From Thalia democratica (lineage: Eukaryota), in NCBI GenBank assembly GCA_965202585.1, contig OZ241830.1, positions 52,018,001 through 52,082,000 of the forward strand: DNA of 64,000 bases, read 5' to 3'. Positions within the stretch are counted from its first letter, which is position 1. Every line of letters starts with the position of its first letter. This document shows, in pieces, positions 24,171 to 63,573 of the stretch. The notes beneath the pieces are model-generated. The model saw only the letters and a program-made list of their open reading frames with translations, was not told the DNA's origin and made no database searches. The position numbers and the translations under genes were made by a program.

Positions 24171-24190
24171 TTTATATTAAGTAATTTTAA

Positions 24191-32263: not shown

Positions 32264-32373
32264 TAGTTGTAAAATGTGCTGACAATTTGTATTAGTAAAG
32301 TGCTTTTCAGAGAAAATGAATATCATTACTCTGTGACTTTTCCACATGTGAGTTTGAATTGAAGATTCTTTTC
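32264..32373 (-). CDS. Exon: TIR domain part 2 of an IL-1R/TRR-like receptor
   Basis: Acceptor TTTTTTTCAAG and donor GTAAGT. 110 nt, phase 1 to 0, encoding (G)KESSIQTHMWKSHRVMIFIFSEKHFTNTNCQHILQL. Confidence 0.85.
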
Positions 32374-32760
32374 CTTGAAAAAAATCGTTTTATTATAAAA
32401 TCTTTTAAGCCGACCAAAGTTTGCTAAAATATTCAGAGAGAATTTAATATAAAAATTTAAGTTAATGTCGACAAATTTAAAGTCAATTCGTCAACTTGTC
32501 AGACTTAATTGAAAACCCCGAGCGTCTAGAAATATTTAAAAATAAAATAAGTATATTTTTTAACTTATTTTCTTTTAATTTTCTTTTAATTTTATTTTAT
32601 AACATTTCAAAAATGATCTTCAATGTAAAACAAAAGATGTTTTTTTCTTAATTCTATATTTTAATACTTCTATACTAAACTCCTTACTTATATGAATTAA
32701 TCGTGCATCAAAACCATAAAAATTGTGAGAATAAAAAAGTATTTTCAAATTTATACTTAC

Positions 32761-32949
32761 CTTCTCCTGGATTAAAATTGTATGAATCAATCAGTCGATC
32801 ATAATTAATACTATTCATAATTTTCTTCGTTTTGAAAATTGTTTCGCAGAGAATTTCCTTTTCACGTGTATTTGTACTTTCTGACACAAAGTATGACAAA
32901 AAGACGTCGTAATCATAACTATCATCTACATCAAAAATAAGTAGTAGCA
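32761..32949 (-). CDS. Exon: TIR domain part 1 (box 1 and BB loop)
   Basis: Acceptor ...TATACCTAG and donor AG|GTAAGT. 189 nt, phase 1 to 1, encoding DDSYDYDVFLSY...LIDSYNFNPGE. Confidence 0.9.
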
Positions 32950-33125
32950 CTAGGTATAACTAACATAAAAAAAAGAAAATCTTCGTTTAGTAGGTTTTCC
33001 AAAAAATATTGTAAATAAAACGCTTTAATATTAAAACAACTAATGTAAACAAAACATGTAAACACGTAATTTTTAAAGAAATGATCGATGTGTAAAACAA
33101 AGCTTTTTTTTTTTGTGACAGGTTA

Positions 33126-33464
33126 CAGGGTTGCCAAATGTTTTTGGAAAATTTTCTTAAGGTTTTAAAACTACACACTTTTGGGTCTATTTTTAGTTTA
33201 AAGTTAAGTTTAAGGTAAAATACTGTTTTATTATTATAAAAACATTAAAAAGATACTGTAAAGCTACTTCAAAGGTGTTTTTTAATAAAAAAACTTTTAG
33301 ATGATGACAATTTTTTTAATATACATAGTAGATTTTTTGTTTCAAGTCAAAATTTTTCTACTAATATGTAAAATTTGTTTAAAATTCCAGGTTTTTTTTA
33401 TAATATCTCAAGTTCCAGGATTTACGATGTTGTTCCAGGTTTTCAAGTTTTTTTGTCAACCCTG
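33126..33464. mobile_element. hAT-type MITE in an intron of the TIR gene
   Basis: TIR CAGGGTTG(C/A)CAAA at both ends. The flanks AGGTTA / ACATTA match only partly. Confidence 0.7.
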
Positions 33465-33540
33465 ACATTATCACATTTATAATCTGTGCAACAAGTTAAT
33501 TTTAAAATTGTAGAAAATTGATTAAAAATTGTTGAATTAC

Positions 33541-33782
33541 CATTAGTATAGGTTCCTAAAATCTTTCTTAAAAATATTTTAATTTGTATTCTAAAGTTCC
33601 AATAGAGTAAATTTAGTACAACGGCAAGGACAATCCCTGTTACTGAGATAACTGTAGGAAGAAAGTAACCATTTTTTTGAATTAATGGAATAATTTTTAT
33701 TTTAAATTTTTTTGTTTGTTTTTTTTCATATCCATTTAGAGTGTCAAGTACAAAGTCTCCAAACTGGTCGATCGAACTAAGT
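33541..33782 (-). CDS. Exon: end of Ig-like domain, transmembrane helix and juxtamembrane region
   Basis: Acceptor CACTACAG and donor G|GTAATT. 242 nt, phase 2 to 1, encoding LSSIDQFGDFVLDTLNGY...YFLPTVISVTGIVLAVVLNLLYWNFRIQIKIFLRKILGTYTN. Confidence 0.88.
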
Positions 33783-33855: not shown

Positions 33856-33954
33856 CTCATTGTAAAACTGGCATAAACTTTTGTATTAGTCTTGTTTGTT
33901 GCATTCAAACTTAATTTGTTATAAATACAATTATCGCGCCCTTCAACAACTTTT
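33856..33954 (-). CDS. Exon: extracellular Ig-like segment
   Basis: Donor GAG|GTGAGG, then a 73-nt intron. 99 nt, phase 2 to 2, encoding KVVEGRDNCIYNKLSLNATNKTNTKVYASFTM(R) with N-glycosylation sequons. The exact acceptor is less certain. Confidence 0.75.
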
Positions 33955-36027: not shown

Positions 36028-36101
36028 AATTTACAATATCCATAAAACGATCGATTCTTTTGAATAACTGGTATTTTGTTTGGACTTGAATGGTCACATA
36101 C
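36028..36101 (-). CDS. Candidate exon: start of the membrane-proximal Ig-like domain
   Basis: Acceptor TTATAG and donor GTTAGT. 74 nt, phase 0 to 2, encoding VCDHSSPNKIPVIQKNRSFYGYCK(L). The phase matches the 33954 exon. Confidence 0.55.
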
Positions 36102-37087
36102 CTATAATTTAGTTTTAAAAATTATTTACGGGTTATATTTCACATGTCTTAATATCTCATACAATCTTTAGTATTATAGTTGTTTTCAATTGTTATACTT
36201 AAAATACTTTAAGAAAATCTCTATAAAAAACTACAAAACTATGTAAATTTTAAGATGAAACGTTCGAAAAGGAAATGATAATTAGAACGAAATTAACTTG
36301 AGAAGCTAGATATCAAAAAGAACAACAAATTTATTTAAACATAAAGCAAATATCTAATTACTGAATAGATAACTTGCTTTTTGAAGTGATACAGTAAACA
36401 GTGCAGTAAGAAACAAAGCATAACAATTTTGGCTGTATCTTAAAACCAAACTAAAAGTTAAAAACAAAATATAATTGAAAAATTAGAAATTGAATTCAGA
36501 TAACAAATAATACTTTTAAAATAAATATAATTTTTTGAATTATCGATTCCTAAACTAAAAACAATACAATGTTCCGCTTTTTAAAAAGTTCCTGCTTGAA
36601 AATCAAACCCCTATGTATATTAAAATTAGTTCTGTTTCAAAGACAAAAGAACATACTTAAAAACAAAACTAAATTTAGAGTTTCAGCTTAAAACTAAGTG
36701 ACTTTTTTGTTTAACTTCGTTTCTGAGTGAAAAAGTTTCGTTTTTATCAAAAACAATAAATTAAGTTTGTTCACTTTAAAGACACATATAAACTAAAATA
36801 AGTTTAATTTTTGTTTATTGGTTTTTAATGTAGTCATTAATGTTTTCAACTAATTAGTAAAATGCTCAACTTTGATTAAAACATATAAAACAAACAATAC
36901 AAACAAAAAAAATCAATATAAACACGGCAACATGCCTTTACATTGCGAAAGGAAACCTTTACTACTTCCCAGTTTTTCTGAATAACATGGAGTGTTCAGA
37001 AGCGTTAAGCACGCTGTAAAGGATATGGTGAATGACGTTAAGTTTCCATTTATTTTCGCGTTCCATTTAAAAAAAAAATTTTTTTTT

Positions 37088-37204
37088 GCCAGTTGTGACG
37101 AATTACTTTGATGGCCTGGTAATATATAAAGGACTTGGTTCAAAATGCTACGTCGTTTTTTAAGGTCGGCCACAAGAAGTTTTTGGCTACTGCGTCAATG
37201 GTCT
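37088..37204 (-). pseudogene. Gypsy A integrase zinc-binding region, continuing from 49247
   Basis: KTIDAVAKNFLWPTLKNDVAF*TKSFIYYQAIKVIRH. It joins in frame to ...AHQNLHLGIE once the two LTR insertions are removed. Confidence 0.85.
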
Positions 37205-37726
37205 TGTAACACTTCAACAGTTTTCTTCTCAGTCGAAAGCAGTTTTCTTTCTTTCTTTTCTCTTAAACTATTCAAACCACTTAAATTCAGTAACGCGCTT
37301 GTTTTAGTGAGTTAGTTTTTAGTGTCTTAGTTGGTAACACGTCTATTGCTTGTAAGTGTTGTGTTCTCGTCGTACACTTGTACGACAGCGACTGTTTTTT
37401 ATATGAACGTTTGAATTAAAGTAGTTATTTGTAAAGTTTGCTATATTTTGTTTAGTCGTTTCTATTCATCGTAATACAGCTTTTTGTTTTTAAGACTCGA
37501 TTTCTTTAATAAGTATTTAAGCATTCTAAAAATCTTACTACTTAATTAGGCTAAGCTTAAATGATAGTCTAAAAATCGTTTCATAAACCAACTTGGCTAA
37601 ATAACTTAGCTAAGTCATTTCTAAGCATTTAAGTAACCGTCACCGATATTGTTATAACGCGTTAAGTCAGTTAGTATCAGGTTCGCGTAAATATAAGAAA
37701 CAATTTTACATCGGTAGATCGGTAAA

Positions 37727-37740
37727 TGGTGACCCTGGAT
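37727..37740 (+). other. Primer-binding site, tRNA-Trp type
   Basis: TGGTGACCCTGGAT directly follows the 5' LTR of element B. Confidence 0.75.
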
Positions 37741-38609
37741 ATTTGAGTACGCACCTTAATTAAGTCCGTAACTTCTTCTTTTTTAATTTCTACTTTTGTA
37801 GATGGTGACCCAAAATTAGTTTAAAATTTTATAAAGACTTTAACAGTAGAACAAAAACAAAGTCTACTAGTATCATGGATATACTTTATTTTAAGCCAAA
37901 TAGCTGCCAACATTTTTAGGGACTGGAGGAAATTTAAAGAATACAAATATAATACATTAATAGCAGAGTTTTCCTCGTCTGATCCCCCGAACCAGTAGCC
38001 TACAGATATCTAAACTGTAAGTACAATCACAATCAAATTAACTGCTTAGAAAAAACCCCATTGCATTGGTTAATGTCATGTATAGATAACAACCTCTACC
38101 AACTTATATTATGGGAAGAGCGCGTAGCTAACCGCTTAATATGTCTTCCGTGGTTCTTGTTAAACCATATAGATTACGAATGGGGTAAGTATAGGAGCAT
38201 CGAAGTAATCGATGAAGCCCGCGAAAATCTCGAAGATAATAACAGCCTGTAACGAAATTATAGATTTTAACCTTGAAATTGATTTGTTAACAGCTGAGAT
38301 TAACAAAAGACAAAGTAGGTGCGATATATTCAAGAAAAAGCAGTTCGAGAAATATGTGTGGTTCGAATACCAAGGTTTTAGCAACAAACGGTACCAAGTT
38401 ATATAACGAGAAACCTTTAAGTAGCTTAATATTATAGAGAGTTTTTTGAAATATCTCCCTTTATTAAACATAGTCCATAAAATATCTGATATTGAGACGG
38501 TAATTGACAAATTCGAAAGTTTTTGTAGGTATAACGACGAACTTGACAATAGTGAAAGAATAAAATTTGTCTTATGGTCCAGTGTTTTACCTCCTGATGA
38601 TATGTTTTT

Positions 38610-39320
38610 TTGATTCAAATACAACTGAACATAGAAATCTTATTTTTACGTAACTCATATAAGAGAAATCATGAGAAACTTATGCGCGAACCTTTGCAAA
38701 AAATACGCGAATTAGAAGCCGAACCCGATCGCAAGCACGCTGTCAGAATAGCTGCTAGAGAAGCAAAACGCAATCGCGCTAACGCCATACCGAATTATGA
38801 CGTCACAAGTACGGCGTCACGTAATACAGCAAAAAAAAAACCTGATAAGAAACAACGTTCTGACCAACCACGGCTAGCATCACCAAGGCCCGCGTCAATG
38901 GTCAGCGCCAACGAAGCTAGCACCTATACGACCAGCACCAACGATTCGAGCCGTCCTAACCAGCACCACAACGGGCAGTCCCAACGGTCAGCGCCACCGA
39001 AGCCAGCACCTATTCAACCAGCGCCAACGATCAGATCCATCTTAGCCAGCAACACAACGGGCAGTCCCAACGGTCAGCACAACCGCAGCCAGCACCAGAA
39101 CAATAAGAGCCAACGGCCATTTCAGAAATGTCTTCCGTCAAACCGAAAAACGCACGGAAATTATCCTCGTCTACGACCGGAAGCACAGCAGCGACTAAAA
39201 ACACTTCTTCCAACATTACTTCGTCCGGCAAACCGAACAAATCACGAAAAATGGCTTTTTTCTAAACAAAAGCACATCAGCGACTACAAACACTTCTTCC
39301 AGCATTACTTCGTCCGATAA
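38610..39320 (+). pseudogene. Low-complexity ORF remnant inside element B, possibly a gag C-terminus
   Basis: 236-aa S/P/Q/R-rich frame containing internal repeats (ACGGGCAGTCCCAACGGTCAGC x2; ACTTCTTCCA(A/G)CATTACTTCGTCCG x2). No domain was recognised. Confidence 0.35.
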
Positions 39321-41044
39321 ACCGACGAACTCGCAAAAGTTACCCTTTTCTCTAAACAAAAGCACAGCAGCGACGTCACAAAACGACGAAACTAAAATAA
39401 ATGTTAAGTACGATCGCGAAATCTTTACAATAAAACACATTTCTTACTTGAAACGAAAACGATTGCAAATAACAAAAAACTTTTTAATATTAGCATATAG
39501 CAAATTTTTAAGACAAACCGCGAATTAGTTTGGTATATATTTCACAAATGGCTATTTAAAACCTAAAAAACTCTAAACGATATTGCACGTATTTTTTAAA
39601 CTAATCATGAATTATTTTGGTACATTTTTCATCGATGGCGCCTTAAAGATTTTGAAATCTAAAAACTTGTTAGTCAGATAATAAACCGTTGTGAAACTTT
39701 GAGAATAACTTCAAACGCGATTTTTCACCGCTGGAAAATCAAATTAAGATGTTATTGAAACTTTACGGTTAATTAACTCTTAAAACGAAAAGTTAAGACC
39801 ACCAAAAGAGTAGTTTGTTTTTATTTAATTGTAGCAGACAACTAGTCTAAGAAGGTTTCTGAACAAAGCTTAGTACGAAATCGAGTCGCAAGAATTTTAA
39901 AGAGTATTTATAGAGTTTAAACTTTAACTTATTTTTATTTTGAGCTTTTACTAATACTAAAAAAGAATTGCCCAAATTTGTTAAACTTAATTTCAATTTG
40001 TTGTTTAGCAACAGTTTTATGTTAAAACTTTGAACTATAATATTCACAGTTGTACTACAATAACATTAGTAATTGCTATTAAAATGGGATGAAGGTAGTC
40101 TTCCTCTTTTGATTTTAAAGACCGGACAGGATTGAATTTTAGATAAATATAAATGGTAAGAACCATTAAAAAAATCAGTCACAGTCTTATACAACCACTT
40201 TGAAGAGATCTTTCGTTTATTAAAAAACAAACATTTTCAATTCTGTAGAAAACAAAAAAATATACTAGCAACTAGAGAAAGTATATTAAATATTTTTAGC
40301 AAAATTTGAAATAAAACTAAAAACTACCATATTATTATAATACTGAATTTCATACTTTTACTTTAAAATTAATGGAACACTTATATTTGAGATTAGTCAG
40401 TAAAGTTTGATATAATTTTTCAATTTGAGAAACTGAGAAAAAGACACTTTGGAAAATTATTTTTGTTTACTGTAACTAAGAAAAACTATTTCTATAAACA
40501 ACAAACAATTAAAAAAATCCCCTAGTATTTTACTTGATAAAAAATTTTTTTTGATGACATTTTCAATTTTTTATTATTAAAACTATTCCTTAAAAACACT
40601 GTTTAAATTAATTTTTGCCTTAGTTTTTTTAATCCACCATTGTTCTGTGTAGTCTAAATTAGTTCTTATAGGGCTTTCTAAAAACTGGACTGTGTAGGCA
40701 TTTTCTATCTTTTCTGGTATATTGTTTTTGTGAAATTTATTATTATGTATAATTAGAGCGAATTGGTCTTTTATTTAATGTTTTAGTTCAGTTTTATTGT
40801 TTTTCCATATGTTTCTGTGGGCATTCCACCTCTTAGTAAAGCTATTCATAGTCTGTCCAATGTATAAATTTTTGCATATGTTGCATGTAGCTGCATAAAT
40901 TCCATAATTTTTGCAATTTAATTGTTGTTTAATTTTCATATTTGTATTGTTTTGTTATTACTTATCATATGTTTATTATAGTTTCCAAAATTTCCACACA
41001 AAGCACACTTTCCATATTCAGCTGTTTTGTTGTTTTCTGTTTTT

Positions 41045-42132
41045 CAGGGTTGCCACACACTCAGGGAATCTCAGGGAATTTTCAAACTGTAGAAAATCTC
41101 AGGGAAACTCAGGGAATTTTGGCATTTTTCTTTTAACTCAGGGAAACTCAGGGAAGTTTTGATTTTTTCTCTAAATTTCAGGGAAGTTTTTGAAAATCTC
41201 AGGGAAATTTTTTTCTAGATCTAGAATGAGGTTTAGTTAATCCAGTTTCAATATTTTGTTCAAAAGTAGTAATTTTTATTATTTAAGTGGTTATTTTGAA
41301 TTTTTTTAGCCTTGCGGCTAGTTCTTCAATATTCTTAGTATTAACATTGTAGTTTTTTTAAGTTTTAAATTTATATTTACTTAAGTAAAATCAAACAGTT
41401 TAGAGAAATGAAAATTGCTGTTAACTATTCATTGAAAAGTTCTAATAAACTTTTTATTTTTAGTTACTTATGTAGTTTAAAAAACACTATGTTGTACTAT
41501 TAGTTCTTATTTTTTAAATAATAAAGTTATTTGTTATTTGTTTACAACTACTTGTTTTCAGTAAAAAAAATTAAAATGAATACAGATTAGTGTTGTATTA
41601 CTTTTGTTAAAAAAATAGAGGTTAAATTTTTGTTTATAAATAATAATTTCAAAAGTAGTAGCAGTTTTCAGAACAGTTGCTAGGAAAGACATACAAGTCA
41701 TAATGAAGTTATTATGTATGCATTTAAGTGAGTTCTTCATGTGAAATTATTATTATAGTATAATTAAATTTTGTCACTTAAAATGTCAAACAAATTAAAC
41801 TTTATTCTTTTATGTAGAAAGTTAACTAACAAGTTTACACAAAGTTGTGCAAAAATTCAGTTTTTAATTTTTAATTGGTTTAAACCTTTTAAGATTGAGT
41901 TTTTGAAAACAGTTTTTTTCATAAATTTAATGCAGAAGCATACACATACAACCTTCCTTTTATTATTAAAGAAGAAAAATGAGAATGAGGTATTAATAAT
42001 TTGTGTTAGAAGAGAAATTTTTTTTTTTAAGATTTGAAAAATACTCAGGGAAACTCAGAGAATTTTAAGGTTACTCAGGGAAATTTTTGGTCACTCAGGG
42101 AAGATTTTTTGGCTCAAAGAGTGGCAACCCTG
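41045..42132. mobile_element. hAT-type non-autonomous element in the left PLE arm
   Basis: TIR CAGGGTTGCCAC, subterminal CTCAGGGAA repeats, and a 6-bp TSD GTTTTT. Confidence 0.9.
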
Positions 42133-43346
42133 GTTTTTGTAAAATTATTTTTGTTTATTAATATATTTCTCAGTGTTTTTGGTCTCTTATAAGTTAATCT
42201 TAATAATTCTGTACTGTAACATTGTTCATTTTTGTTAAAATTTATAAATTATTTAAAGCTGGTTGCCCAAGTCACTTTTTCACTTTGTTCTGATTTTTTT
42301 ATGTTATTTGTACTAGGATCTTTATTACATACTTCATCTAATTCATTAAAGGTATTATTTATTAATTTTTTACTGAAACTTGATCTACTGCATTTAATTT
42401 TTAAGTTAATTAGTGACTTTTCATAATCTTCTGTTTTTTCATTTAATTTTTTAAGTCTATTAGCTTCTGATAAAATTATTTCTCTAAAAACGTGTGTTAG
42501 ATGGTAAGAATTGCCATTTAAAAATTTTGCTAATTTTGCTGTGGGTTTGGTGTGGTTTACTGTTTTGAATCCGTTTATTTCAGAGCTATTTATAGTATGT
42601 AAAATATCTAAAAATTCCAGTTGTTTTCCTTCTTCTGTATTTGAGATTTTTTTTAATTGTAAATTTAGATCATGAGATTGAAATTTTTTGGTGAGTTCAT
42701 CTTGAATAAAAATAGGTTTATCTGCTGGGCACAAAAAATAATGTCGTCTATATATCTTTTATAAATAAAACACAATTTTAAAAAGTTTAATTTTTTAGTT
42801 ATAAAGTGGAGGGCAATATTTGCCAGTGAGACGCTGAAATTTTCTCCTGTAGGTATCCCTTGGTTATTTTTGTATAGACTATTTTTAAAACTAACATAAT
42901 TGTTTTCTAAGCAGAACATTATTGTTTCTACTATTTGTTTATTTTGTTTACAGTTATAATGAGTACAAACTTTCAGGCAATCTTCAAGGGAGTTTTTTAT
43001 CAGAATTCTTTTGAGGGATGGGTATAGGTTTTTAACATCTGCTGTGATTATATTAATTTCTTCTTTAATTTAATTTTTTTTCCAACTAAATAATTCTTCT
43101 AGGTATTGGTCACTATCTTTGCAATATTCATTAATTTCAGTTTTACAATAGTTTATTGCAATATTTTTAATTAGGTTTTGGAGCATGGTGGTAATTCGAG
43201 ACAAAAAACTGTTGCCTATAGCCCAAATCATTCTTGTAGGTATTTCTCTTATATTTTTTGTTTTCACTTGTTCTGGATTTAATTTATGTGTTTTGAATGT
43301 TGGATATATATGTCCTGGGTTGTCATTTTTGAAATATTTTGCTTGC

Positions 43347-53794: not shown

Positions 53795-53865
53795 TTTATA
53801 AAAAATTTTAAAACTATATTTTTAAATACTTATTTTTCTAATTAAGTTAGAATATATCTTAATTT

Positions 53866-54097
53866 GTGTACTTCATATTTTAAAGAGAATGATCAATTAT
53901 AAATTTTATTAACAATACAATGTTTCACTCGCTTGAAACTGGTCAAACGAGATCTTCAGTTGTTTAAAATCTTATTCAAATAGAAATATTTTAAATAAGA
54001 TTATTTGAATAAGGTTTTAAAAAACTGAAGATCTCGTTTGACTTATTTCAAGCGAGTGAAAAATTGTATTGTTAATAAAATTTAAAATTTATAATTA
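53866..54097. mobile_element. 232-bp palindromic PLE-end insertion carrying hammerhead motifs
   Basis: Arms at 53895-53982 and about 54002-54096, with a 29-nt tail on the left arm only. TSD ATATCTTAATTT at 53854-53865 and 54098-54109. Confidence 0.82.
53911..53964 (-). ncRNA. Minimal type I hammerhead ribozyme
   Basis: AACAA-CTGAAGA-T-CTCGTTTGA-ccagtt-TCAAGCGAG-T-GAAAC-att-GTA-TTGTT. It has a canonical core, 5-bp stem I, 9-bp stem II, minimal stem III and GUA cleavage triplet. The plus-strand mirror at 54019-54073 is damaged (GAAAA). Confidence 0.8.
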
Positions 54098-54111
54098 ATA
54101 TCTTAATTTTA

Positions 54112-55021
54112 TATCACAGATGTTCTTGTGCTAAAACTTTATTCCGACTAACGGCGTTTCACTGCTCTCAAATAAATTTAAGAACAGATCTACGGAGTCT
54201 ATAAAATGTTAACACACATTAGAAAAAAAGCAGAAAAAAGCATGTATAATTATGTATAGTGTTTATCTAGGTAGTAACTATAAATGGACTTTATGGTTTA
54301 AAAACAAAGTTTGGGATAAAAGCGTAAAATTATAAAATTGTCTACAAAAAAAACAAATTTAATAAAAGTAGGCACCAACCTTAAAAAGCTCTAAGAATAG
54401 GCAAATTTTAAAAATGAAAATTAAATTGAGTTGTGCAGAAATGTTACGTCATAATAATTTTAACAAATTATTCAATAATTTATACAGCTTGAAAACATGA
54501 AGTATTAAACTTGCAAGAATATATAAGTTTTGTAAAATAAATTAGTACATAAATAGACAGAGTTATACTTCATGTTTTCAAGCTGTATAAATTATTGAAT
54601 AATTTGTTAAAATTATTATGACGTAACATTTCTGCACAACTCAATTTAATTTTCATTTTTAAAATTTACCTATTCTTAGAGCTTTTTAAGGTTGGTGCCT
54701 ACTTTTATTAAATTTGTTTTTTTTGTAGACAATTTTATAATTTTACGCTTTTATACCAAACTTTGTTTTTAAACCATAAAGTCCATTTATAGTTACTACC
54801 TAGATAAACACTATACATAATTATACATGCTTTTTTCTGCTTTTTTTCTAATGTGTGTTAACATTTTATAGACTCCGTAGATCTGTTCTTAAATTTATTT
54901 GAGAGCAGTGAAACGCCGTTAGTCGGAATAAAGTTTTAGCACAAGAACATCTGTGATATACATTCCGATAAGCTTAGCTTATCAGGATCTCCAGGATTTA
55001 ACGCCTTATAACGTTACATCT
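54112..55021. mobile_element. 910-bp head-to-head palindromic insertion of PLE 3' UTR
   Basis: Arms at 54112-54505 and 54565-54958, with a tail of about 63 nt on the right arm only. TSD TATCTTAATTTTA at 54099-54111 and 55022-55034. Same family as 56341-62206. Confidence 0.9.
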
Positions 55022-55279
55022 TATCTTAATTTTACAAATATATATGAATGTATCTTAATTCCTGATTACCTTAAATTCACAAGTAATTGTAAATATACCT
55101 TATTATGAGAATATCTGATAATATAAATCAACTTAGTTTAACGATCACTCCGTATTTTTTATTTTTAATGATACTTTAAAAGTATTAGAACTAATTTTTG
55201 CATTTACTTGCTTGTTAATTTTATATTTATTAAGTAATTGACCATCATTTAAATAAAAATTTTTAATTTTAAATTATTT

Positions 55280-55390
55280 CGTGGTAAAATGTCACTAAGT
55301 GCTAAAGTGACACTGTGATAAAATGACACTCCATGCTAAGTGTCACTCCGTACCAAAGTGATGCCGTGCTAAAGTGACGACCCGTGCTAA
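55280..55390. repeat. Degenerate 16-18-bp tandem repeats (GTGCTAAAGTGACAC-like), probably a DNA-transposon subterminal remnant
   Basis: About six imperfect units are visible. No matching opposite end was found. Confidence 0.5.
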
Positions 55391-56340
55391 CAAAAACAGC
55401 TAAATTAACAGCTGTAGTACTTTATTAAAACTTAAACTTTCTTAATTCAAAAAACATTTACATAATCATTATTTTATGGTAAAATTGTCATTATTTTACC
55501 GGCAAAGTTTTAATCTAAACTTTGGTAAACTTATTACAAGCGGTATAACACAAAGCTAAATAAAAAGTTATTTCATTTAAATTAATCCTAAAATAGACAG
55601 ATACAGAAATAACAATACCAACAAAGTTAAAATACAGCTTATACATATAAAAATTAAGCCTAATATTAGTTATCAAGTTTAGTTGTTTTTAGCTAATTTT
55701 TATTAGTTCAATGGTTTTAACTAAGCTACTAACATTAAAATTGAACTAATCTGTCTGTATTAAGGTTTGTATTTTTTATTAAACGTACTAATGTGAAATT
55801 TCTTTTATATTTGACATTGGGATATATGTACTTTTTCAAAACTTTGTACAATTTTCAGGTTATTCTACATCACAGTTGCTCCTTGGCCTTAAAATACTAA
55901 CTAGTTGTGATTTTTTTGAAGCAGAACCATTAACAAAAAGAATTCTATATAATTTGCAGTAAAACTTACCACTTCTATTTTTTAATTTTATTAATAAAAC
56001 AATGTTTTACTTTTTTAACAATATTTTTAAATAAGATTTTTAGTTGATTAATAAAATCTGTAAAATTTAAGGTAAACAAGAAAGAAAAATTTGGGCTAGA
56101 CTCAAAATAAAACTGGCTATTAGGTGTGAAAACAAACAAAGTACGACTAATAATTTGATATAAATTTTAAAACTAGTAGGCGATTTGTTAAAATTGATTC
56201 ATTTTAAGGTTAAAAAAAATAAACTTCTTAAGCTGAATACGACAAAGTTGAACTATTATTAAACAAACATATTTATAATTAGTTGGCTTGTAAACAATCA
56301 AACTCTTGCAAATAGTAAACTAAACTATAATACAGTACAT

Positions 56341-59300
56341 AAGATGTAACGTTAAAAGGCGTTAAATCCTAGAGATCCTGATAAGCTAAGCTTATCGGAA
56401 TATATACCACAGATGTTTTTGTGTTAAAACTTTATTCCGACTAACGGCGTTTCACTGCTCTCAAATAAATTTAAGAATAGATCTACGGTGTCTATAAAGT
56501 ATTAACACACATTAGAAAAAAAGCATGTATAATTATGTATAGTGTTTATGTGGAATAAAAACATAAAATTATAAAATTGTATACAAAAAACACAAATTTA
56601 ATAAAAGCAAACACTAACCTCAAAAAGCTCTAAGAATAGGCAAGTTTTTATAATGAAAATTAAATTGAGTTGTACAGAAATGTTACGTCATAATAAATTT
56701 AACAAATTGATCAATAATTTATGCAGCTTAAAAACGTGAAGTATTTAATTTGCAAGTGTTTGTGATTGTTAATGTGGATGTTGTGAAATAAATAAGTACA
56801 TAAGTAGACAGAGTTATTTAAGGAGAATCGTCGGTTGTGGGGACAAATATTCGATAAACCTTGCCGCTTATTCAGAAGTAGGTCTTTATCTTCTGCTGCA
56901 ATTACTGCTCTTTCTGTATTGCAAGTTGGGCAAATTCTACTTACTCCGTTGGATGCATGTTTGATCTTTGAAACAATACTCCACTCCATATTTGGCCTTT
57001 TACCGTAAATGTGAAATTAGCTCCAGACATAATCCGATAAACGCGTGCTTTGTTTTTTATTTATATTTTAAAAAGTATGTTTATGGTTGGCATATCTATC
57101 ATTGAAACTGCCTGCTGTACTTCCGATATAAGTTTTATCTGGGCCCTTACTTTCAACTTTAACTTTATAAATTACATTTAATTAAACAATTACGTTTTAA
57201 TGGGCAGTTATCTTTATTTATTTTACGGCAATTACATTTTTTAGGCATATTACTTAACTTATAAATATTAGGCTTAGTTGGTTTTGAATATTTATTTATA
57301 GTTTTATTATTATGCATTTTACTTATACTTTTAGCGCTATTATTACTTACTTGTTCTAAGATTTCTTTTATCATTTTAGAAATTCTAGTTATACGTTGAT
57401 TATTATAATCTACACTATTGTTAGTACTATTGATATGAATATTTTCATTTTCATTAATATTTAAATTATTGTTACAGCTTATACCTTTAATATTTAAAGT
57501 TTTAATATGTTTTACATTATTGTTACCATAATTAAAATTACCACTATTAGGATTATCATCATTACTACTGTTATTATCACTACTATTAAAACTATTATTT
57601 TTATTATTACTGTTATTATTAATATGATTAGTTTAATTAGAAATATTATGTATATCTACGTTATTACTAACTTTATTACTAGACTTATTATTTGTATTAG
57701 CTTTGATATGTCTATTTTTAAAGTTTAAAATTACTGTTTTGTTGTGCAATTGTATTAAAGTTTTAACATTACTCATGCAACTAAAAGAAATTTTAACTGT
57801 CTTTCTATAAAGAATTTTATTATAAAAGTTGCTATCGGGGAAGTGTTTATCGACTAGCTTTAAAAACTCTTTACCTAAGTTTATATTAACTGAAGAGCAA
57901 TATGGAGGACTATACCACATTATATGTCGGTTACGCGGTTTTTTTCGTTTTTTATCTACATCTAATTTTTCATACTTTAATTTACATTTAAAACTTCGAT
58001 TTTTTAATTCAGTTTCGTACGGTGCGTTTATTGTGTTAAATATTCTTTCATTCGAAGAGAAGGTACTTAAACGTTTTTGTGTCATTACCGGGAGGCATTT
58101 TTTACATGATAAGGGTGGTCAGAATTAGTATTAATAAAGTTTAATAAAGAATTGGGTTTACGGTACGGACGGTAAGTATTATTAGATAAATCTAAAGTTA
58201 CATCTAAAAAATTCGTTTTTTGCGCTTCTATTTCTAAAGTTATTTTTAAACCGATATCAGACATCAATCTAAACGTTGACTTTTTAATCTTTTCGTAAAC
58301 AAGAGGTTTTGAATGATCAATGACACCGAGTCCATCATCTCTATACAATCCACAATTATCAAAAATACTTTTGAGTTTATCTAGAATGTATAACCCTACA
58401 AGATCGCATACCTCCGCTCCATGAAAACTACCCATTGGTATATCAAAAAACTATCGGTATCATTTTTCTTCCATACATCATCACCCGAAAAAAGTAAAGA
58501 GTCACACGAATGGAATATAATGTCTGTATCTGATTTATTGAAATCAGAAAATTGGGATGCATAATCTAGTGCGTTAATAAGTGCGCTTTTGTAATAGACG
58601 GATAAAATTGGACAATATCAAAGCTAATAAAACGCTTACTACTTTTATTGTTAATGTTGTTAAACTATTGTAATAGTTCACCAGTATTTTTCCATTGGAT
58701 TAGACTAGTGGCTGTTCTTACGTCTTTAATTATACTAGTTAACATTTGTTTAGATATTTTACCAATATGCGTTTTACTTTTACTTGCTTGCTATCTTTAT
58801 AACCTAGGTATACGTTTACCAGTAATATTATTTTCATTTAAAAGTTCTTGTGCACGGGAGTCTATCGTATCAGCCGGATTGTTGGTACATTTTTTATAGT
58901 TTTTTGTGATATTGTCTAAAAGTAACTTTTCATAAATTTTTGTACTGATTTTATATAAATTATTAGTTTTGTCTGCAAAAATAACAAGTTTGTTGACTTA
59001 TTTATAGAATTAATCCTGTTACGTAAATTATATAGAAAGTTATTAGTTTTACCGGGTTTAAGTTCAATTTTATTAATTAAATCAATCAATTCAGATTCAA
59101 ATGGTATTAATTTTACACAGATTGGTGCCGACTTTTTAGTCGGTAAAGGCAAAGATTTACTTATTGTACTTGATTTACTTGTGTTCAAATGAGCATCAGA
59201 ATTATCGGCAACATAGTTTGTTTTTTACACAACTTTTGTTTCGTAATAAAATGCACGCCATCTCATCTTTTGGATGAGGTCGTTAGATTGTTTCATTACG

Positions 59301-62206
59301 CTTTATTACGATGGGGGCGTTTGTGTAATGAAACAATCTAACGCCCTCATCCAAAAGATGAGATGGCGTGCATTTTATTACGAACAAAAGTTGTGTAAAA
59401 AAACAAACTATGTTGCCGATAATTCTGATGCTCATTTGAACACAAGTAAATTAAGTACAATAAGTAAATCTTTGCCTTTCCCGACTAAAAAGTCGGCACC
59501 AATCTGTGTAAAATTAATACCATTTAATCAATAAAATTAAACTTAACCCGGTAAAACTAATAACTTTCAATATAATTTACGTAACAGGATTAATTCTAAA
59601 AAAAAGTTTAATAAACTCGTTATTTTTGCAGACAAAACTAATAATTTATATAAAATCAGTCCAAAAAATTATGAAAAGTTACTTTTAGACAATATCACAA
59701 AAAACTATAAAAAATGTACCAACAATCCGGCTGATACGATAGACTCCCGTGCACAAGAACTTTTAAATGAAAATAATATTACTGGTAAACGTATACCTAA
59801 ATTAGAAAGATCGCAAGCGTATATAACAGTAAAGGATCATAAAGATAATTTTCCTGCAACAGTCAAGTGCAGACTAATAAGTAAAAGTAAAACGCATATT
59901 GGTAAAATATCTAAACAAATGTTAACTAGTATAATTAAAGACGTAAGAACAGCCACTAGTCTAATCCAATGGAAAAATACTGGTGAACTATTACAATAAT
60001 TTAACAATATTAACAATAAAAGTAGTAAGCGTTTTATTAGCTTTGATATTGTCCAATTTTTTCCGTCTATTACAAAAGCGCACTTATTAACGCACTAGAT
60101 TATGCATCCCAATTTTCTGATTTCAATAAATCAGATACAGACATTAAAAATGATACCGATAGTTTTTTGATATACCAATGGGTAGTTTTCATGGAGCGGA
60201 GGTATGCGATCTTGTAGGGTTATACATTCTAGATAAACTCAAAAGTATTTTTGATAATTGTGGATTGTATAGAGATGATGGACTCGGTGTCATTGATCAT
60301 TCAAAACCTCTTGTTTACGAAAAGATTAAAAAGTCAACGTTTAGATTGATGTCTGATATCGGTTTAAAAATAACTTTAGAAATAGAAGCGCAAAAAACGA
60401 ATTTTTTAGATGTAACTTTAGATTTATCTAATAATACTTACCGTCCGTACCGTAAACCCAATTCTTTATTAAACTTTATTAATACTAATTCTGACCACCC
60501 TTATCATGTAAAAAATGCCTCCCGGTAATGACACAAAAACGTTTAAGTACCTTCTCTTCGAATGAAAGGATATTTAACACAATAAAAGCACCGTACGAAA
60601 CTGAATTAAAAAATCGAAGTTTTAAATGTAAATTAAAGTATGAAAAATTAGATGTAGATAAAAAACGAAAAAAAACCGCGTAACCGACATATAATGTGGT
60701 ATAGTCCTCCATATTGCTCTTCAGTTAATATAAACTTAGGTAAAGAGTTTTTAAAGCTAGTCGATAAACACTTCCCCGATAGCAACTTTTATAATAAAAT
60801 TTTTTATAGAAAGACAGTTAAAATTTCTTAGTTGCATGAGTAATGTTAAAACTTTAATACAATTGCACAACAAAACAGTAATTTTAAACTTTAAAAATAG
60901 ACATATCAAAGCTAATACAAATAATAAGTCTAGTAATAAAGTTAGTAATAACGTAGATATACATAATATTTCTAATTAAACTAATCATATTAATAATAAC
61001 AGTAATAATAAAAATAATAGTTTTAATAGTAGTGATAATAACAGTAGTAATGATGATAATCCTAATAGTTGTAATTTTGATTATGGTAACAATAATGTAA
61101 AACATATTAAAACTTTAAATATTAAAGGTATAAGCTGTAACAATAATTTAAATATTAATGAAAATGAAAATATTCATATCAATAGTACTAACAATAGTGT
61201 AGATTATAATAATCAACGTATAACTAGAATTTCTAAAATGATAAAAGAAATCTTAGAACAAGTAAGTGATAATAGCGCTAAAAGTATAAGTAAAATGCAT
61301 AATAATAAAACTATAAATAAATATTCAAAACCAACTAAGCCTAATATTTATAAGTTAAGTAATATGCCTAAAAAATGTAATTGCCGTAAAATAAATAAAG
61401 ATAACTGCCCATTAAAACGTAATTGTTTAATTAAATGTAATTTATAAAGTTAAAGTTGAAAGTAAGGGCCCAGATAAAATTTATATCGGAAGTACAGCAG
61501 GCAGTTTCAATGATAGATATGCCAACCATAAACATACTTTTTAAAATATAAATAAAAAACAAAGCACGCGTTTATCGGATTATGTCTGGAGCTAATTTCA
61601 CATTTACGGTAAAAGGCCAAATATGGAGTGGAGTATTGTTTCAAAGATCAAACATGCATCCAACGGAGTAAGTAGAATTTGCCTAACTTGCAATACAGAA
61701 AGAGCAGTAATTGCAGCAGAAGATAAAGACCTACTTCTGAATAAGCGGCAAGATTTATCGAAGATTTGTCCCCACAACCGACGATTCTACTTTAAATAAT
61801 TTTGTCTACTTTTGTACTTATTTATTTCACAACATCCACATTTACAATCACAAACACTTGCAAATTAAATACTTCACGTTTTTAAGCTGCATAAATTATT
61901 GATCAATTTGTTAAATTTATTATGACGTAACATTTCTGTACAACTCAATTTAATTTTCATTATAAAAACTTGCCTATTCTTAGAGCTTTTTGAGGTTAGT
62001 GTTTGCTTTTATTAAATTTGTGTTTTTTGTATACAATTTTATAATTTTATGTTTTTATTCCACATAAACACTATACATAATTATACATGCTTTTTTTCTA
62101 ATGTGTGTTAATACTTTATAGACACCGTAGATCTATTCTTAAATTTATTTGAGAGTAGTGAAACGCCGACAGTCGGAATAAAGTTTTAACACAAAAACAT
62201 CTGTGG
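56341..62206. mobile_element. 5.9-kb head-to-head palindromic PLE insertion (RT of the MGSFHGAEVC type, decayed)
   Basis: Arms at 56403-59299 and 59325-62210, a 25-bp centre, and a 62-nt tail on the left arm only. TSD (TATA)ATACAGTACAT at 56326-56340 and 62207-62221. RT motifs FDIVQF.PSI, MGSFHGAEVCDLVGLYIL and LYRDDG, plus GIY-YIG remnants (YIGST, CNTER). Confidence 0.92.
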
Positions 62207-62610
62207 TATAATACAGTACATCTTTTTTTAAATCAAATGCTATATTGTGACGTAATTACAAGCTTCCACTAATAAATCTAATGGATTTTTTATTGTCAAA
62301 ATTATTTAGATTCAGAGATAGATATAATTCACTATGTACTCTTTTTTTCACATTACCAACAATTTTTTTTTCTTATTTAAAAAAAACTATTCTTTTTTTC
62401 TTTTAATTTGAAATTTGTCAAGACTTACACGTGACTATTATTAACTAAACAAATACTAATTAAAACGAAAATATAAACAAAATATAATGCAAGAACTGCT
62501 GTTTAGGGTACACCTCAGTTTTAATCTTTAAAAAATTAAACAGCTTAAACAAAAAAAAAAAAGACATTTAAACTACAATATTGTTTAAATTTGCTTTTAG
62601 AAAAACTTAC

Positions 62611-62783
62611 AATAAGTTTCTTAAGGCTTTTTGTTTCTAACTTTGACAGTATAATACTTGGAGTGTAAAATGTTTTAATAAAGTTTCCGCGAACTTGACA
62701 GTTTATTGTAAAATTTTTATTGGTTTCAATTTTGTATTCAGACTTTTCACACATTATAAACGTTTCTTTTTGATGACTTTTTT
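62611..62783 (-). CDS. Exon: start of a second Ig-like domain
   Basis: Acceptor AATTTTCCAG and donor GTAAGT. 173 nt, phase 1 to 0, encoding (E)KSHQKETFIMCEKSEYKIETNKNFTINCQVRGNFIKTFYTPSIILSKLETKSLKKLI. Confidence 0.78.
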
Positions 62784-63260
62784 CTGGAAAATTTTAAAAA
62801 TCTAGTTATGAGTACAAAAAGTAATTTCAATGCAAATTATAAACTAAAAGGAACATTAACAAAACATGAACACTTTTTAAAACTGTTAATTTTTATCTAA
62901 AAGGTGCATACTGCATCTTCCAGCAGATCACTATAAAGATTGATAAAGTGTACTCATAATTTTAAGTTTTAATTTTTGAAAAAAATTAAGTTTAAATAGA
63001 AATTTGTTCAATTTAACTACAATATCAATATTTTTTTTTTGTAATATATGTTTGATGTTAAAAAATAAGCAGAGATCTCTACTCAAAAAGGAGAATCAGT
63101 ACATTATTCTATTTGAATAAGAAGTTAGTTTAAGTACTGATGACCTCATTGGGCAAAAGTTTGTTCACTTAAAAGCTATTAGAAATAATATATTGTAAAT
63201 TTATTGTATTTCAAACTACATTATGTAACAAAAGTGTGTTAAATAATAAAGTTCAGCTAC

Positions 63261-63366
63261 CGTAAACACAAACTCCAAATGAATGAATTGTCCAGCTGGA
63301 TAAGTTATAATAAGCTTTGTAGACATATATGCCAACTTCATCATATGTTATTTTTGGTATGATAAG
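63261..63366 (-). CDS. Exon: E-F-G strands of an Ig-like domain
   Basis: Acceptor TTTTTTTCATTTAG and donor G|GTAGCT. 106 nt, phase 0 to 1, encoding LIIPKITYDEVGIYVYKAYYNLSSWTIHSFGVCVY, which fits the LxIxxVxxxDxGxYxC pattern with Cys replaced by Tyr. Confidence 0.8.
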
Positions 63367-63469
63367 CTAAATGAAAAAAAGTTTAAACACTTTTTAAGTT
63401 TTTTTTAAATTCCATAGAAAGATATAAAAAATAAAGGTTTAAATTTAGTGTCAACTTAAATAATTTTAC

Positions 63470-63573
63470 CTTAAAAGGGTACTTTTTTTTACAGTTGTGA
63501 ATCAATCTTGACTTTATATTGAAGTATATAAAGCTGCACTCTCTTAAAATTGATGCACTGTCACCTATAGGGT
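63470..63573 (-). CDS. Exon: first half of an Ig-like domain
   Basis: Acceptor ATTTAAACAG and donor AAG|GTAAAA. 104 nt, phase 1 to 0, encoding PIGDSASILRECSFIYFNIKSRLIHNCKKKYPFK. Upstream exons were not resolved. Confidence 0.7.

What the first reader, a model, noticed from the sequence alone, without database searches (positions are those of the whole stretch)
32264..63573. Hidden IL-1R-like receptor gene (Ig-like x3, TM, TIR) spread across a TE-filled 31 kb
Seen directly: two blocks of minus-strand exons with canonical splice sites and matching phases. The block 63573-62611 gives one Ig-like domain and the start of a second. The block 36101/33954-32264 gives a further Ig-like domain, one TM helix, an IL-1R-like juxtamembrane segment (YWNFRIQIKIFLR) and a TIR domain (YDVFLSY, NFNPG, SHRVMIFIFS). 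Two of the Ig-like folds lack the F-strand cysteine. Established: Ig-TM-TIR receptors are known from anthozoans, whereas, as I recall, the Hydra TIR receptors TRR-1/2 were described without LRR or Ig ectodomains. Inferred: the two blocks form one gene with an intron of about 26 kb, making this either an unrecognised hydrozoan IL-1R-like receptor or a TRR whose ectodomain was missed.
Basis: partly seen in the sequence, partly recalled or inferred. Interest (0 to 1): 0.82.

Follow-up and report, generated by a model that had tools for sequence, protein, structure and literature searches.

The report
Hydra Ig-like receptor with TIR-like tail
The scattered exons are one real, expressed gene of at least 48 kb for a single-pass membrane receptor with about four Ig-like modules outside the cell and a very divergent TIR-like domain inside, a receptor type that Hydra was reported to have lost.

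Summary
Every boundary it named (63573, 62611, 36101, 33954, 32264) is an AG/GT exon edge.

- **Expression:** a spliced 2108-nt contig in public run X4 joins 33541 directly to 32925. Its depth fits exons D, E and H to about 1 nt.
- **One gene:** a compact paralog on contig C10 (5.3 kb, 12 exons, 546 aa) has the same exon order, similar sizes and identical phases. The upstream block A+B+C aligns to the matching part of the paralog (score 82 against 31.7±5.7 for shuffles, 0/2000).
- **Extent:** the gene is larger than reported. A last coding exon lies at 18728-18558, after a 13.5-kb intron holding a LINE. Three candidate 5' exons lie beyond the window. The 12-exon model gives one open frame of 556 aa: signal peptide candidate, about four Ig-like modules, TM helix, 147-aa cytoplasmic domain.
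- **TIR:** likely but not proven. Box 1, the Pro-Gly loop and the central-strand (βC) motif are present and conserved in the paralog. hhalign against genuine Hydra TIR exons gives P=0.027. Pfam TIR, TIR_2 and SEFIR models and PDB searches see nothing exon by exon, and box 3 is absent.
- **Not HyTRR:** the canonical Hydra TIR exons lie at other loci.

Structure prediction of the spliced protein could not be run.

The parts
63470..63573 (-). Exon A (104 nt, phase 1 in, 0 out): first half of an Ig-like module (B-strand region ..HNC..)
   Evidence: AG/GT edges. It is the best hit of paralog exon 5 among 346 stretches (E=0.14), with the same phases as paralog exon 5.
63261..63366 (-). Exon B (106 nt, 0 in, 1 out): second half of that module, with the F-strand motif YDEVGIYVY (Cys replaced by Tyr)
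   Evidence: AG/GT edges. It is the top hit of paralog exon 6 (E=0.0083) and the reciprocal top hit (E=0.052). Phases are the same.
62611..62783 (-). Exon C (173 nt, 1 in, 0 out): first half of the next Ig-like module (B-strand FTINC)
   Evidence: AG/GT edges. A+B+C against paralog exons 5+6+C' scores 82 (Smith-Waterman), against 31.7±5.7 for shuffles, 0/2000.
36102..62610 (-). Intron C-D, 26.5 kb, filled with repeats and retroelement fragments
   Evidence: A reverse-transcriptase fragment lies at 43339-44139. G+C varies across the stretch. No better candidate exons for paralog profiles lie inside it. That this is an intron is inferred; no junction read was seen.
36028..36101 (-). Exon D (74 nt, 0 in, 2 out): completes the module begun in C, with F-strand YGYC
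   Evidence: X4 depth gives 72 nt in bin 35900-36099 and 2 nt in bin 36100-36299, which matches exactly. The donor sits right after Cys-x plus 'tt', as in the paralog.
33856..33954 (-). Exon E (99 nt, 2 in, 2 out): first half of the membrane-proximal Ig-like module, with NAT and NKT glycosylation sites
   Evidence: X4 depth gives 55 nt in bin 33900-34099. Identity to the orthologous contig L020 is 74% with no gaps and kept splice sites, against 41-51% in the introns.
33541..33782 (-). Exon F (242 nt, 2 in, 1 out): rest of the membrane-proximal module, TM helix and basic juxtamembrane stretch
   Evidence: Laid directly by X4 contig record 19, positions 625-866. P0001 is a 47%-identical exon in another species (E=1.4e-11). 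Identity to L020 is 67% with a single 3-nt indel.
33599..33664 (-). Transmembrane helix (22 hydrophobic residues, FLPTV..LLYW) followed by NFRIQIKIFLRK
   Evidence: Read from the translation. It corresponds to residue 368 onward of the 556-aa model.
32761..32925 (-). Exon G (165 nt, 1 in, 1 out): TIR-like strand A (YDVFLSY), helix A, strand B and the Pro-Gly loop (NFNPGE)
   Evidence: X4 contig record 19 positions 459-624 abut exon F, so the splice 33541|32925 is shown directly. It is the top hit of the paralog profile among 3968 stretches (E=0.0013). AlphaFold2 run on this exon alone gives a helix at residues 19-38.
32264..32373 (-). Exon H (110 nt, 1 in, 0 out): helix B, strand C (KSHRVMIFIFSE) and the start of helix C (..HILQL)
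   Evidence: X4 depth gives 73 nt in bin 32300-32499. The paralog exon has the same size and the same ends (E=0.0033).
18729..32263 (-). Intron H-I, 13.5 kb, holding a plus-strand LINE (27028-30006)
   Evidence: The 992-aa ORF has RVT_1 (E=2.3e-38) and endonuclease domains. X4 depth is zero in 31900-32099, so exon H does not run on. That this is an intron is inferred.
18558..18728 (-). Exon I, coding part (56 codons plus stop): end of helix C, strand D (LKVILIV), helix D, strand E. The 3' UTR probably runs on to about 18380.
   Evidence: The acceptor ttctag|GCA is in phase 0. It is the top hit of the profile of paralog exon I' among 3968 stretches (E=0.0079). Paralog exon I' shows 10 synonymous against 9 conservative changes between species. 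The 349 nt of the RNA contig 3' of exon H would reach about 18380 if they are exon I plus 3' UTR.
18357..18362 (-). AATAAA polyadenylation signal candidate
   Evidence: Read in the sequence. It lies about 20 nt beyond the end expected from the contig length.

Best explanation
The window holds nine of the twelve exons of one minus-strand protein-coding gene. The gene spans at least 48.6 kb, from about 3.2 kb beyond the window's upper end down to 18558.

**Predicted product (556 aa), a type I membrane protein:**
- a candidate signal peptide;
- about four Ig-like modules, each split over two exons, with five N-x-S/T sites inside the window;
- one TM helix and a basic stop-transfer stretch;
- a 147-aa cytoplasmic domain with alternating strand and helix segments, which is a very divergent TIR-type domain.

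**Most likely mechanism.** It works like an IL-1R-type or Toll-type receptor. The Ig-like ectodomain binds an extracellular ligand or partner. Receptor pairing brings two TIR-like domains together, and these recruit a TIR adaptor such as Hydra MyD88.

**What is shown and what is inferred.**
- Shown: transcription and the F-G splice; conservation of exons E and F; the paralog with the same exon plan.
- Inferred: the C-D and H-I junctions, the Ig fold, TIR homology and all signalling steps.
For: **Expression and splicing**
- X4 contig record 19 (2108 nt) lies on 33541-33782 and directly on 32760-32925.
- Its depth (19.7 per base) reproduces exons D, E, G and H to about 1 nt in the 200-nt bins.

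**One gene**
- The C10 paralog has 12 exons in 5.3 kb with the same order and identical phases. Exon sizes are 85/158/157/122/142/167/77/87/233/159/110/144 nt, against 94/161/172/104/106/173/74/99/242/165/110/171 in the window gene. Both models give a single open frame, 546 and 556 aa.
- A+B+C against the matching paralog part scores 82 against 31.7±5.7 (0/2000). Mismatched controls score 24 and 29.

**Constraint**
- L020 against the window: exons 74% and 67% identical, the E-F intron and flanking sequence 22-51%, with an in-frame indel and kept splice sites.
- Paralog exon I' has 10 synonymous against 9 conservative changes.

**TIR-like domain**
- The motifs Y-x-YD-[VA]-F-[LI]-x-Y, D-x-x-x-x-x-PG and KSHR + hydrophobic strand + E-x-x-F are conserved between the paralogs at equal spacing.
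- An HMM of 8 genuine Hydra TIR exons scores the window domain 12.7 bits; 0/1000 shuffles reach that.
- hhalign of the 3-sequence family against those exons gives P=0.027 over 69 columns in the expected register, including C-x-x-[IV]-[LV]-Q-x-A...strand D.

**Family size:** only two members in the genome.
Against: - No Pfam family matches any exon piece: neither TIR nor any Ig family.
- Six-frame searches of the whole genome with TIR, TIR_2 and SEFIR hit other loci, but neither this one nor the paralog.
- PDB sequence and profile searches of exons G and H give no TIR chain.
- The ESM Atlas feature search of exon G gives unrelated clusters at 0.76 or below.
- The paralog's cytoplasmic domain scores only 0.6 bits against the Hydra TIR HMM (221/1000 shuffles reach it).
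- Box 3 (F-W) and the W-C..E motif of helix C are missing.
- No run on record as RNA holds the exons. X4 is taken to be RNA only because its contig is spliced.
- The C-D and H-I junctions and the three 5' exons were not seen in any read.
- The signal-peptide exon is a weak candidate.
Confidence: 0.62

Rival explanations
1. The gene and membrane topology are as above, but the cytoplasmic domain is not a TIR homologue. It would be a lineage-specific alpha/beta domain, and the protein would be an IgSF adhesion or recognition receptor that signals in another way.
For: Every curated model fails: Pfam TIR, TIR_2 and SEFIR, PDB and the Atlas. The paralog scores nothing against the Hydra TIR HMM. Box 3 is absent. 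Hydrozoans do have IgSF receptors with unrelated tails, such as the Alr family.
Against: Box 1, the Pro-Gly loop and the strand-C motif sit in the right order and at the right spacing directly after a TM helix. They are the most conserved positions between paralogs that are 24% identical overall. hhalign gives P=0.027 in the correct register, and the window domain beats all 1000 shuffles. The domain length (136-147 aa) fits a TIR.
Confidence: 0.25
2. There are two separate genes: an upstream Ig-like gene (63.6-62.6 kb) and a TM-TIR-like gene that starts somewhere between 36.3 and 62 kb.
For: No read spanning 62611 to 36101 was seen. The intron would be 26.5 kb, against 118 nt for the same intron in the paralog. 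Paralog profiles for C', D', E' and F' do not find the window exons above noise.
Against: The paralog carries the homologues of A, B and C directly upstream of D' in one open frame, with the same phases. The module begun in C is only completed by D (Cys-Cys 50 residues apart). The RNA contig needs 1069 nt 5' of exon D, and depth is zero just upstream of 36101. The 12-exon model is a single ORF.
Confidence: 0.04
3. It is a transcribed but decaying gene copy (a pseudogene in the making). The compact C10 paralog would be the working gene.
For: Its introns are swollen by transposable elements (26.5 and 13.5 kb). Two of 15 differences from a second strain fall in exon G and both change the protein. 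Ectodomain identity to the paralog is only 21%.
Against: The 556-codon frame over 12 exons is intact with canonical splice sites. The transcript is spliced at depth 19.7. Exons E and F are kept in frame in another species while the introns have diverged.
Confidence: 0.05
4. It is HyTRR-1 or HyTRR-2 with an overlooked ectodomain.
For: It is a TM protein with a TIR-like tail in Hydra. The HyTRRs were described from cDNAs with short ectodomains (PMC1896004).
Against: The HyTRRs were found with TIR HMMs. The Pfam-positive TIR exons of this genome lie at C1:77.48 Mb, C6:55.56 and 55.61 Mb, C2:35.89 Mb and other places, never here. Those exons (for example ..ICFHERDFPAG..WCRYEVQ..) share about 17-20% identity with the window domain.
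Confidence: 0.03

Closest known systems
Anthozoan IL-1R-like receptors (NvIL-1R1-3 of Nematostella; Ig x2-3, TM, TIR)
   Same: Type I membrane protein with several Ig-type modules outside, one TM helix and a C-terminal TIR-type domain. It is a cnidarian protein and, like them, not an orthologue of vertebrate IL-1R (PMC1896004, PMC5094078).
   Different: The anthozoan proteins are recognised by Pfam Ig and TIR models; this one is not. It has about four modules, two of the three inside the window lack the second cysteine, and box 3 is missing. Direct sequence comparison with the anthozoan proteins could not be made here.
Vertebrate IL-1R family, especially divergent members such as SIGIRR/TIR8
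   Same: The Ig-TM-TIR plan. It has a Pro-Gly in the loop after strand B and a basic juxtamembrane stretch.
   Different: There is no detectable sequence homology. The Ig-TIR combination is thought to have arisen independently in cnidarians and vertebrates (PMC5094078). Any comparison to a decoy or regulatory member is from general knowledge and was not tested.
Hydra HyTRR-1 and HyTRR-2
   Same: Hydra membrane proteins with an intracellular TIR-type domain. They are possible partners in the same MyD88 pathway.
   Different: The HyTRRs have short ectodomains without Ig or LRR and a canonical, HMM-detectable TIR. The canonical TIR exons of this genome lie at other loci.
Hydractinia Alr family (unusual IgSF receptors)
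   Same: Hydrozoan type I receptors whose Ig-like domains escape sequence models and needed AlphaFold to be recognised (PMC9546547).
   Different: In Alr genes each Ig-like domain is one exon, and the tails carry ITAM or ITIM motifs and no TIR. Here each module is split over two exons and the tail is a folded TIR-like domain.

Membership tests
TIR domain (Pfam PF01582 / PF13676) | Match to the family HMM above the curated cut-off | tested here: inconclusive
   No hit on any exon piece, and no hit at this locus in six-frame searches of the genome at E<=10. The domain is split over three exons, and the spliced 147-aa sequence could not be submitted because it has no reference.
TIR domain | Box 1 ((F/Y)D(A/V)F(I/L)SY) at the start of strand A | tested here: met
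   YDVFLSY in the window and YDAFICY in the paralog and its orthologues. The positions are invariant in the alignment. A second strain has YDAF.
TIR domain | Box 2 / BB loop (RDxxPG) | tested here: inconclusive
   D-S-Y-N-F-N-P-G in the window and D-P-N-D-C-I-P-G in the paralog. Pro-Gly is kept and the Arg is absent. One orthologue has P-D.
TIR domain | Box 3 (F-W) in the last helix | tested here: not met
   There is no F-W after strand E in the window, the paralog or L034. The C-terminal tails differ in length and sequence.
TIR domain | Significant similarity to undoubted TIR domains | tested here: inconclusive
   An HMM of 8 Pfam-positive Hydra TIR exons scores the window 12.7 bits (0/1000 shuffles) but the paralog 0.6 bits. 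hhalign gives P=0.027 over 69 columns. PDB searches find no TIR chain.
TIR domain | Flavodoxin-like (beta-alpha)5 fold of about 135-150 residues | not testable with these tools
   The length (147 and 136 aa) and the alternation of hydrophobic strands and amphipathic helices fit. Only exon G could be folded by reference, and it gave helix 19-38 at pLDDT 68. The spliced domain has no reference.
IL-1R-like architecture (Ig-TM-TIR) | Signal peptide, two or more Ig domains, a single TM helix and a C-terminal TIR in one polypeptide | tested here: inconclusive
   A single ORF of 556 aa with one TM helix at residue 368. The paralog has a clear signal peptide, while the window's is only a candidate. 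The Ig and TIR parts rest on motifs.
Immunoglobulin superfamily domain | B-strand Cys and F-strand D-x-G-x-Y-x-C about 40-60 residues apart; match to Ig models; beta-sandwich fold | tested here: inconclusive
   Module C+D has FTINC ... FYGYC, 50 residues apart. Modules A+B (DEVGIYVY) and E+F (DQFGDFVL) keep the motif without the Cys. Pfam gives no Ig hit on exon pieces. The fold was not tested.
HyTRR (Hydra TIR-only receptors) | Short ectodomain without Ig or LRR; canonical TIR found by HMM | tested here: not met
   The ectodomain is about 350 aa. The TIR HMMs miss the locus and hit others.
Hydractinia Alr family | One exon per Ig-like domain; ECS fold; ITAM/ITIM tail | tested here: not met
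   Here the modules are split by introns and the tail is a 147-aa domain. The Alr features are taken from PMC9546547.

The most novel reading that the evidence does not exclude
Hydra is textbook-listed as lacking both Toll/TLR and IL-1R-type receptors and is said to sense microbes through split LRR and TIR proteins. On this reading it keeps a two-gene family of four-Ig, TM, TIR receptors whose domains have diverged beyond HMM detection. They would be missing ectodomain-bearing inputs to the MyD88 pathway, or regulators of it.
Probability: 0.45. Interest if true: 0.72.

Novelty: new member of a known kind. Interest (0 to 1): 0.6.

Why it matters
Hydra is a main model for early animal immunity and host-microbiome control. 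Its receptor repertoire is described as two MyD88 genes, two TIR-only TRRs and separate LRR proteins, with the IL-1R type 'apparently absent' (PMC1896004).

If the tail is a TIR, the claimed loss of the IL-1R type in Hydrozoa would partly be an artefact of sequence divergence. That would give two concrete genes to knock down in the MyD88 pathway.

The case also shows how exon-split, fast-evolving Ig and TIR domains escape HMM surveys. Paralog exon-phase comparison can recover a gene spread over 48 kb of transposon-rich sequence.

If the tail is not a TIR, the gene is still an unclassified, conserved, expressed IgSF-like receptor family of Hydra.

Tried and rejected
**Searches that gave nothing**
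- Pfam on 16 exon or stop-free pieces: only noise.
- PDB phmmer and profile searches of exons G and H: hexokinase and M2-1 noise.
- ESM Atlas on exon G: unrelated clusters at 0.76 or below.
- SEFIR model on the genome: three other loci.
- AlphaFold2 on exon G alone (4-row alignment): one helix, pLDDT 68, too little for a fold search.
- Two run searches found no run labelled RNA.
- The search of protein representatives with exon F: no full-length protein. Hits were only a 73-aa exon from a metagenome (P0001) and a repeat protein sharing a short motif.
- The search for homologous proteins with a profile of genuine Hydra TIR exons returned one exon-level hit, so no outside TIR profile could be built.
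- tblastx and phmmer between the window and the paralog found only G and H at first.

**Candidates rejected**
- A candidate strand-D exon at 31794 (frame ..IYLIFLLPKITKK..). Its phase does not fit exon H, and the matching frame of the paralog is broken by a stop and two indels in L034.
- A 22-nt micro-exon at 32221-32200, suggested by 22 nt of excess depth. Its intron would be 42 nt and it is not conserved.
- X4 record 17 at 30423-30708, as a 3' exon. There is no AG at its edge and it lies in a high-copy repeat.
- Exon H as the terminal exon. Depth is zero in 31900-32099.

Pfam, HHpred and structure prediction of the spliced protein or its domains were not run. A spliced sequence has no reference, and long typed strings are not to be sent.
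Full report
**Setting**

The window is C6:52018001-52082000 of an 801.8-Mb, AT-rich assembly. Composition and the cited literature point to Hydra. The finding concerns minus-strand exons between 63573 and 32264.

**Are the exons there?**

Checking the phases turned up two mismatches in the simplest reading.

- *Exon D.* If it ended at 36035 it would leave phase 1, but exon E needs phase 2. A donor seven bases further on (TT|GTTAGT, exon end 36028) resolves this and adds Cys-Lys, giving the F-strand motif YGYC.
- *Exon F.* The TM exon cannot start at 33651 if exon E precedes it. An acceptor at 33783/33782 is phase-compatible and extends the exon to 242 nt.

**RNA evidence**

No run labelled RNA holds the region. 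A small run, X4 (47 Mb), held 94% of the words of the first TIR-like exon but only 30% of the surrounding 1.8 kb. That is the pattern expected of spliced RNA.

Laying its contigs on 30300-36299 gave record 19. This contig is 2108 nt long, has depth 19.7, and lies on 32760-32925 and then immediately on 33541-33782. This shows the F-G splice directly and fixes exon G's start at 32925 and exon F's start at 33782.

Only the two longest pieces of that record are listed. However, the mean depth per 200-nt bin divided by 19.7 gives the covered bases:

| Bin | Covered bases | Interpretation |
|---|---|---|
| 32700-32899 | 140 | exon G |
| 32900-33099 | 26 | exon G |
| 33500-33699 | 159 | exon F |
| 33900-34099 | 55 | exon E, 33900-33954 |
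| 35900-36099 | 72 | exon D, 36028-36099 |
| 36100-36299 | 2 | exon D, 36100-36101 |
| 32300-32499 | 73 | exon H |

These fit exons D, E, G and H to about one base. The fit is indirect but hard to obtain by chance.

Depth is zero just upstream of 36101 and in 31900-32099. The transcript therefore splices away at both places. The contig has 1242 nt 5' of exon F, of which D and E explain 173. It has 458 nt 3' of exon G, of which H explains 109-110.

**A paralog gives the plan of the gene**

Searching the genome with exon G found one weak relative on C10. Local phmmer showed that both exon G and exon H match there, with the same exon ends..PG-x-G| and HILQ[LI]|.

I fetched 60 kb around it. The paralog is compact. 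Twelve exons in 5.3 kb (C10:32,329,917-32,324,617, minus strand) encode a clear signal peptide, Ig-like exons, a TM exon and the TIR-like exons. They form one open frame of 546 aa.

All nine exons that have counterparts in the window have the same phases:

| Exon | Phase in → out |
|---|---|
| A | 1 → 0 |
| B | 0 → 1 |
| C | 1 → 0 |
| D | 0 → 2 |
| E | 2 → 2 |
| F | 2 → 1 |
| G | 1 → 1 |
| H | 1 → 0 |
| I | 0 → stop |

The odd donor of exon D falls at the homologous place, right after Cys-x plus 'tt'.

A Smith-Waterman test supports homology of the upstream block:

- A+B+C against paralog exons 5+6+C' scores 82, against 31.7±5.7 for shuffles (0 of 2000).
- D+E+F against D'E'F' scores 45 (32 of 2000).
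- The two mismatched pairings score 24 and 29.
- One local alignment runs collinearly across the C|D junction.

This is the main evidence that the two blocks are one gene. It is joined by the fact that the module started in C (FTINC) is completed only by D (FYGYC, 50 residues on). No read across the 26.5-kb intron was seen, so the junction remains inferred.

**Related species**

The protein searches returned exon-sized gene calls from contigs filed as marine metagenomes.

- *L020 and L021* align to window 33934-33532 at 70% and are the orthologue of the window gene. Exon E is 74% identical without gaps. Exon F is 67% identical with a single 3-nt indel. The E-F intron is 51% identical and the flanks 22-41%. 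All four splice sites are kept.
- *L034* is the orthologue of the paralog, at 75% DNA identity.

**The 3' end**

Comparing the paralog with L034 ruled out a strand-D-like frame I had favoured just downstream of exon H. That frame has a stop and two frame-shifting indels in L034.

The same comparison revealed a further coding exon 650 nt downstream. It begins AAKYAVDGKLKMIAVV.. in phase 0 and shows 10 synonymous and 9 conservative changes between the species.

A profile of that exon finds its window counterpart at 18728, right after the acceptor ttctag. The counterpart begins AVKFMVEGRLKVILIV.. and is the top hit among 3968 stretches, with E=0.0079. Profiles of G' and H' likewise find G and H as top hits, with E=0.0013 and 0.0033.

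If the 349 nt of the contig 3' of exon H are exon I plus 3' UTR, they would reach about 18380. An AATAAA lies at 18362-18357.

**The 5' end**

The contig has 686 nt 5' of exon A. The paralog has three exons there. Their candidate counterparts lie outside the window in L018:

- An exon at L018:2310-2470 (161 nt, phases 1 → 0, W-P-x-x-x-S-C motif). Smith-Waterman score 37 against 22.4±4.6, reached by 66 of 5000 shuffles.
- An exon at L018:475-646 (172 nt, 0 → 1). It starts C-L-I...VVFNTS, like the paralog's C-T-I...VVFNKT.
- A weak signal-peptide candidate at L018:3093-3186.

With these, the 12 exons form a single 1671-nt frame of 556 codons with canonical sites throughout. These three exons are the least certain part of the model.

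**What the protein looks like**

- *TM helix:* it starts at residue 368 and is followed by NFRIQIKIFLRK.
- *Ectodomain:* about 350 residues, with nine N-x-S/T sites. It divides into about four modules of 80-90 residues. Each ends in a [DE]-x-[VFG]-G-x-[YF]-x-[CYL] motif typical of the Ig F strand. Module C+D has the cysteine pair. Modules A+B and E+F have lost the F-strand cysteine, in the paralog as well.
- *Similarity to the paralog:* 24% identity overall, 21% in the ectodomain and 32% in the tail.
- *Ig assignment:* no Ig model of Pfam matches an exon piece, so it rests on motifs and spacing only.

**Is the tail a TIR?**

For:
- The three conserved islands between the paralogs are box 1 (YD[VA]F[LI]xY), the Pro-Gly loop, and KSHR plus a hydrophobic strand plus E-x-x-F. 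They occur in that order, at equal spacing, directly after the membrane.
- With exon I the domain reaches 136-147 residues and shows five strand-helix alternations.
- An HMM built from eight Pfam-positive TIR exons of this same genome scores the window domain 12.7 bits, which none of 1000 shuffles reaches.
- hhalign of the three-sequence family against those exons gives P=0.027 over 69 columns in the expected register. It pairs NCQHILQLAVKFMVEGRLKVILI with WCRYEVQVALTTMHKRGKPLVPI.

Against:
- The paralog alone scores nothing.
- Pfam TIR, TIR_2 and SEFIR miss both loci.
- PDB and Atlas searches are blank.
- Box 3 is absent.

I put TIR homology at roughly two in three. The decisive test is to fold and profile-search the spliced tail. 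It could not be run because a spliced sequence has no reference.

**Comparison with what is known**

- *Literature:* the Hydra literature held here lists four TIR proteins (two MyD88, HyTRR-1 and HyTRR-2). It states that the Toll/TLR and IL-1R types are apparently absent (PMC1896004; see also PMC8260672 and PMC5094078). No paper in the library pairs Hydra with an Ig-TIR receptor.
- *HyTRRs:* they have canonical TIRs. The canonical TIR exons of this genome lie elsewhere, so this gene is not a TRR.
- *Alr genes:* the Hydractinia Alr genes differ in exon plan and tail.
- *Annotation:* whether the current annotation already holds a model for this locus could not be checked. Records of the window's own genome are withheld.

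**Verdict**

The one-gene reading is well supported. The IL-1R-like label is right as an architecture, with about four modules, but it is unproven at the level of folds. The family has two members in this genome.

Noticed in passing
window 27028-30006 (+): A near full-length non-LTR retrotransposon ORF of 992 aa, with an endonuclease domain and RVT_1 (E=2.3e-38). It lies antisense inside the 13.5-kb H-I intron of the receptor gene.
   Followed up: partly
window 33100-33500: A very high-copy short repeat inside the F-G intron. Contig word depth reaches about 1.1-1.65 million in the genomic runs X1 and X3, and about 4000 in X4. There are many internal deletion joints.
   Followed up: no
L020, L021, L034-L038: Contigs filed as marine metagenome assemblies (Tara Oceans project PRJEB4352 and others) carry orthologues of both Hydra receptor genes at 70-75% DNA identity. 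Either a Hydra-like organism or its DNA is present in marine samples, or these assemblies are contaminated.
   Followed up: partly
L030:620-770 and L030:1030-1110 (paralog intron H'-I', minus strand): Non-coding blocks that are 93-100% identical between the two species. That is higher than the coding exons (80-85%), and the frames are broken by stops. Rfam gives no hit at E<=1, and there is no counterpart in the window.
   Followed up: partly
window 32880 and 32904: The contig of a second strain or species (X3, about 99.3% identical over 2.2 kb) has two differences in exon G, and both change the protein. One (Val to Ala) turns YDVF into the canonical YDAF. The other is Glu to Ala.
   Followed up: partly
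P0002 (926 aa), matched by exon F residues 2-32: A six-fold repeat protein shares the motif S-x-IDQFG-x-x-[IV]-x-D-x-L-x-x-YE-x-K with the membrane-proximal module (E=1.2e-6, six stretches). This is probably chance or a shared small motif.
   Followed up: no
window 1-64000: An Rfam scan at gathering thresholds finds no RNA family anywhere in the window. The hammerhead noted by another first-stage entry at 53866-54097, inside the C-D intron, is therefore not recognised at that threshold.
   Followed up: partly
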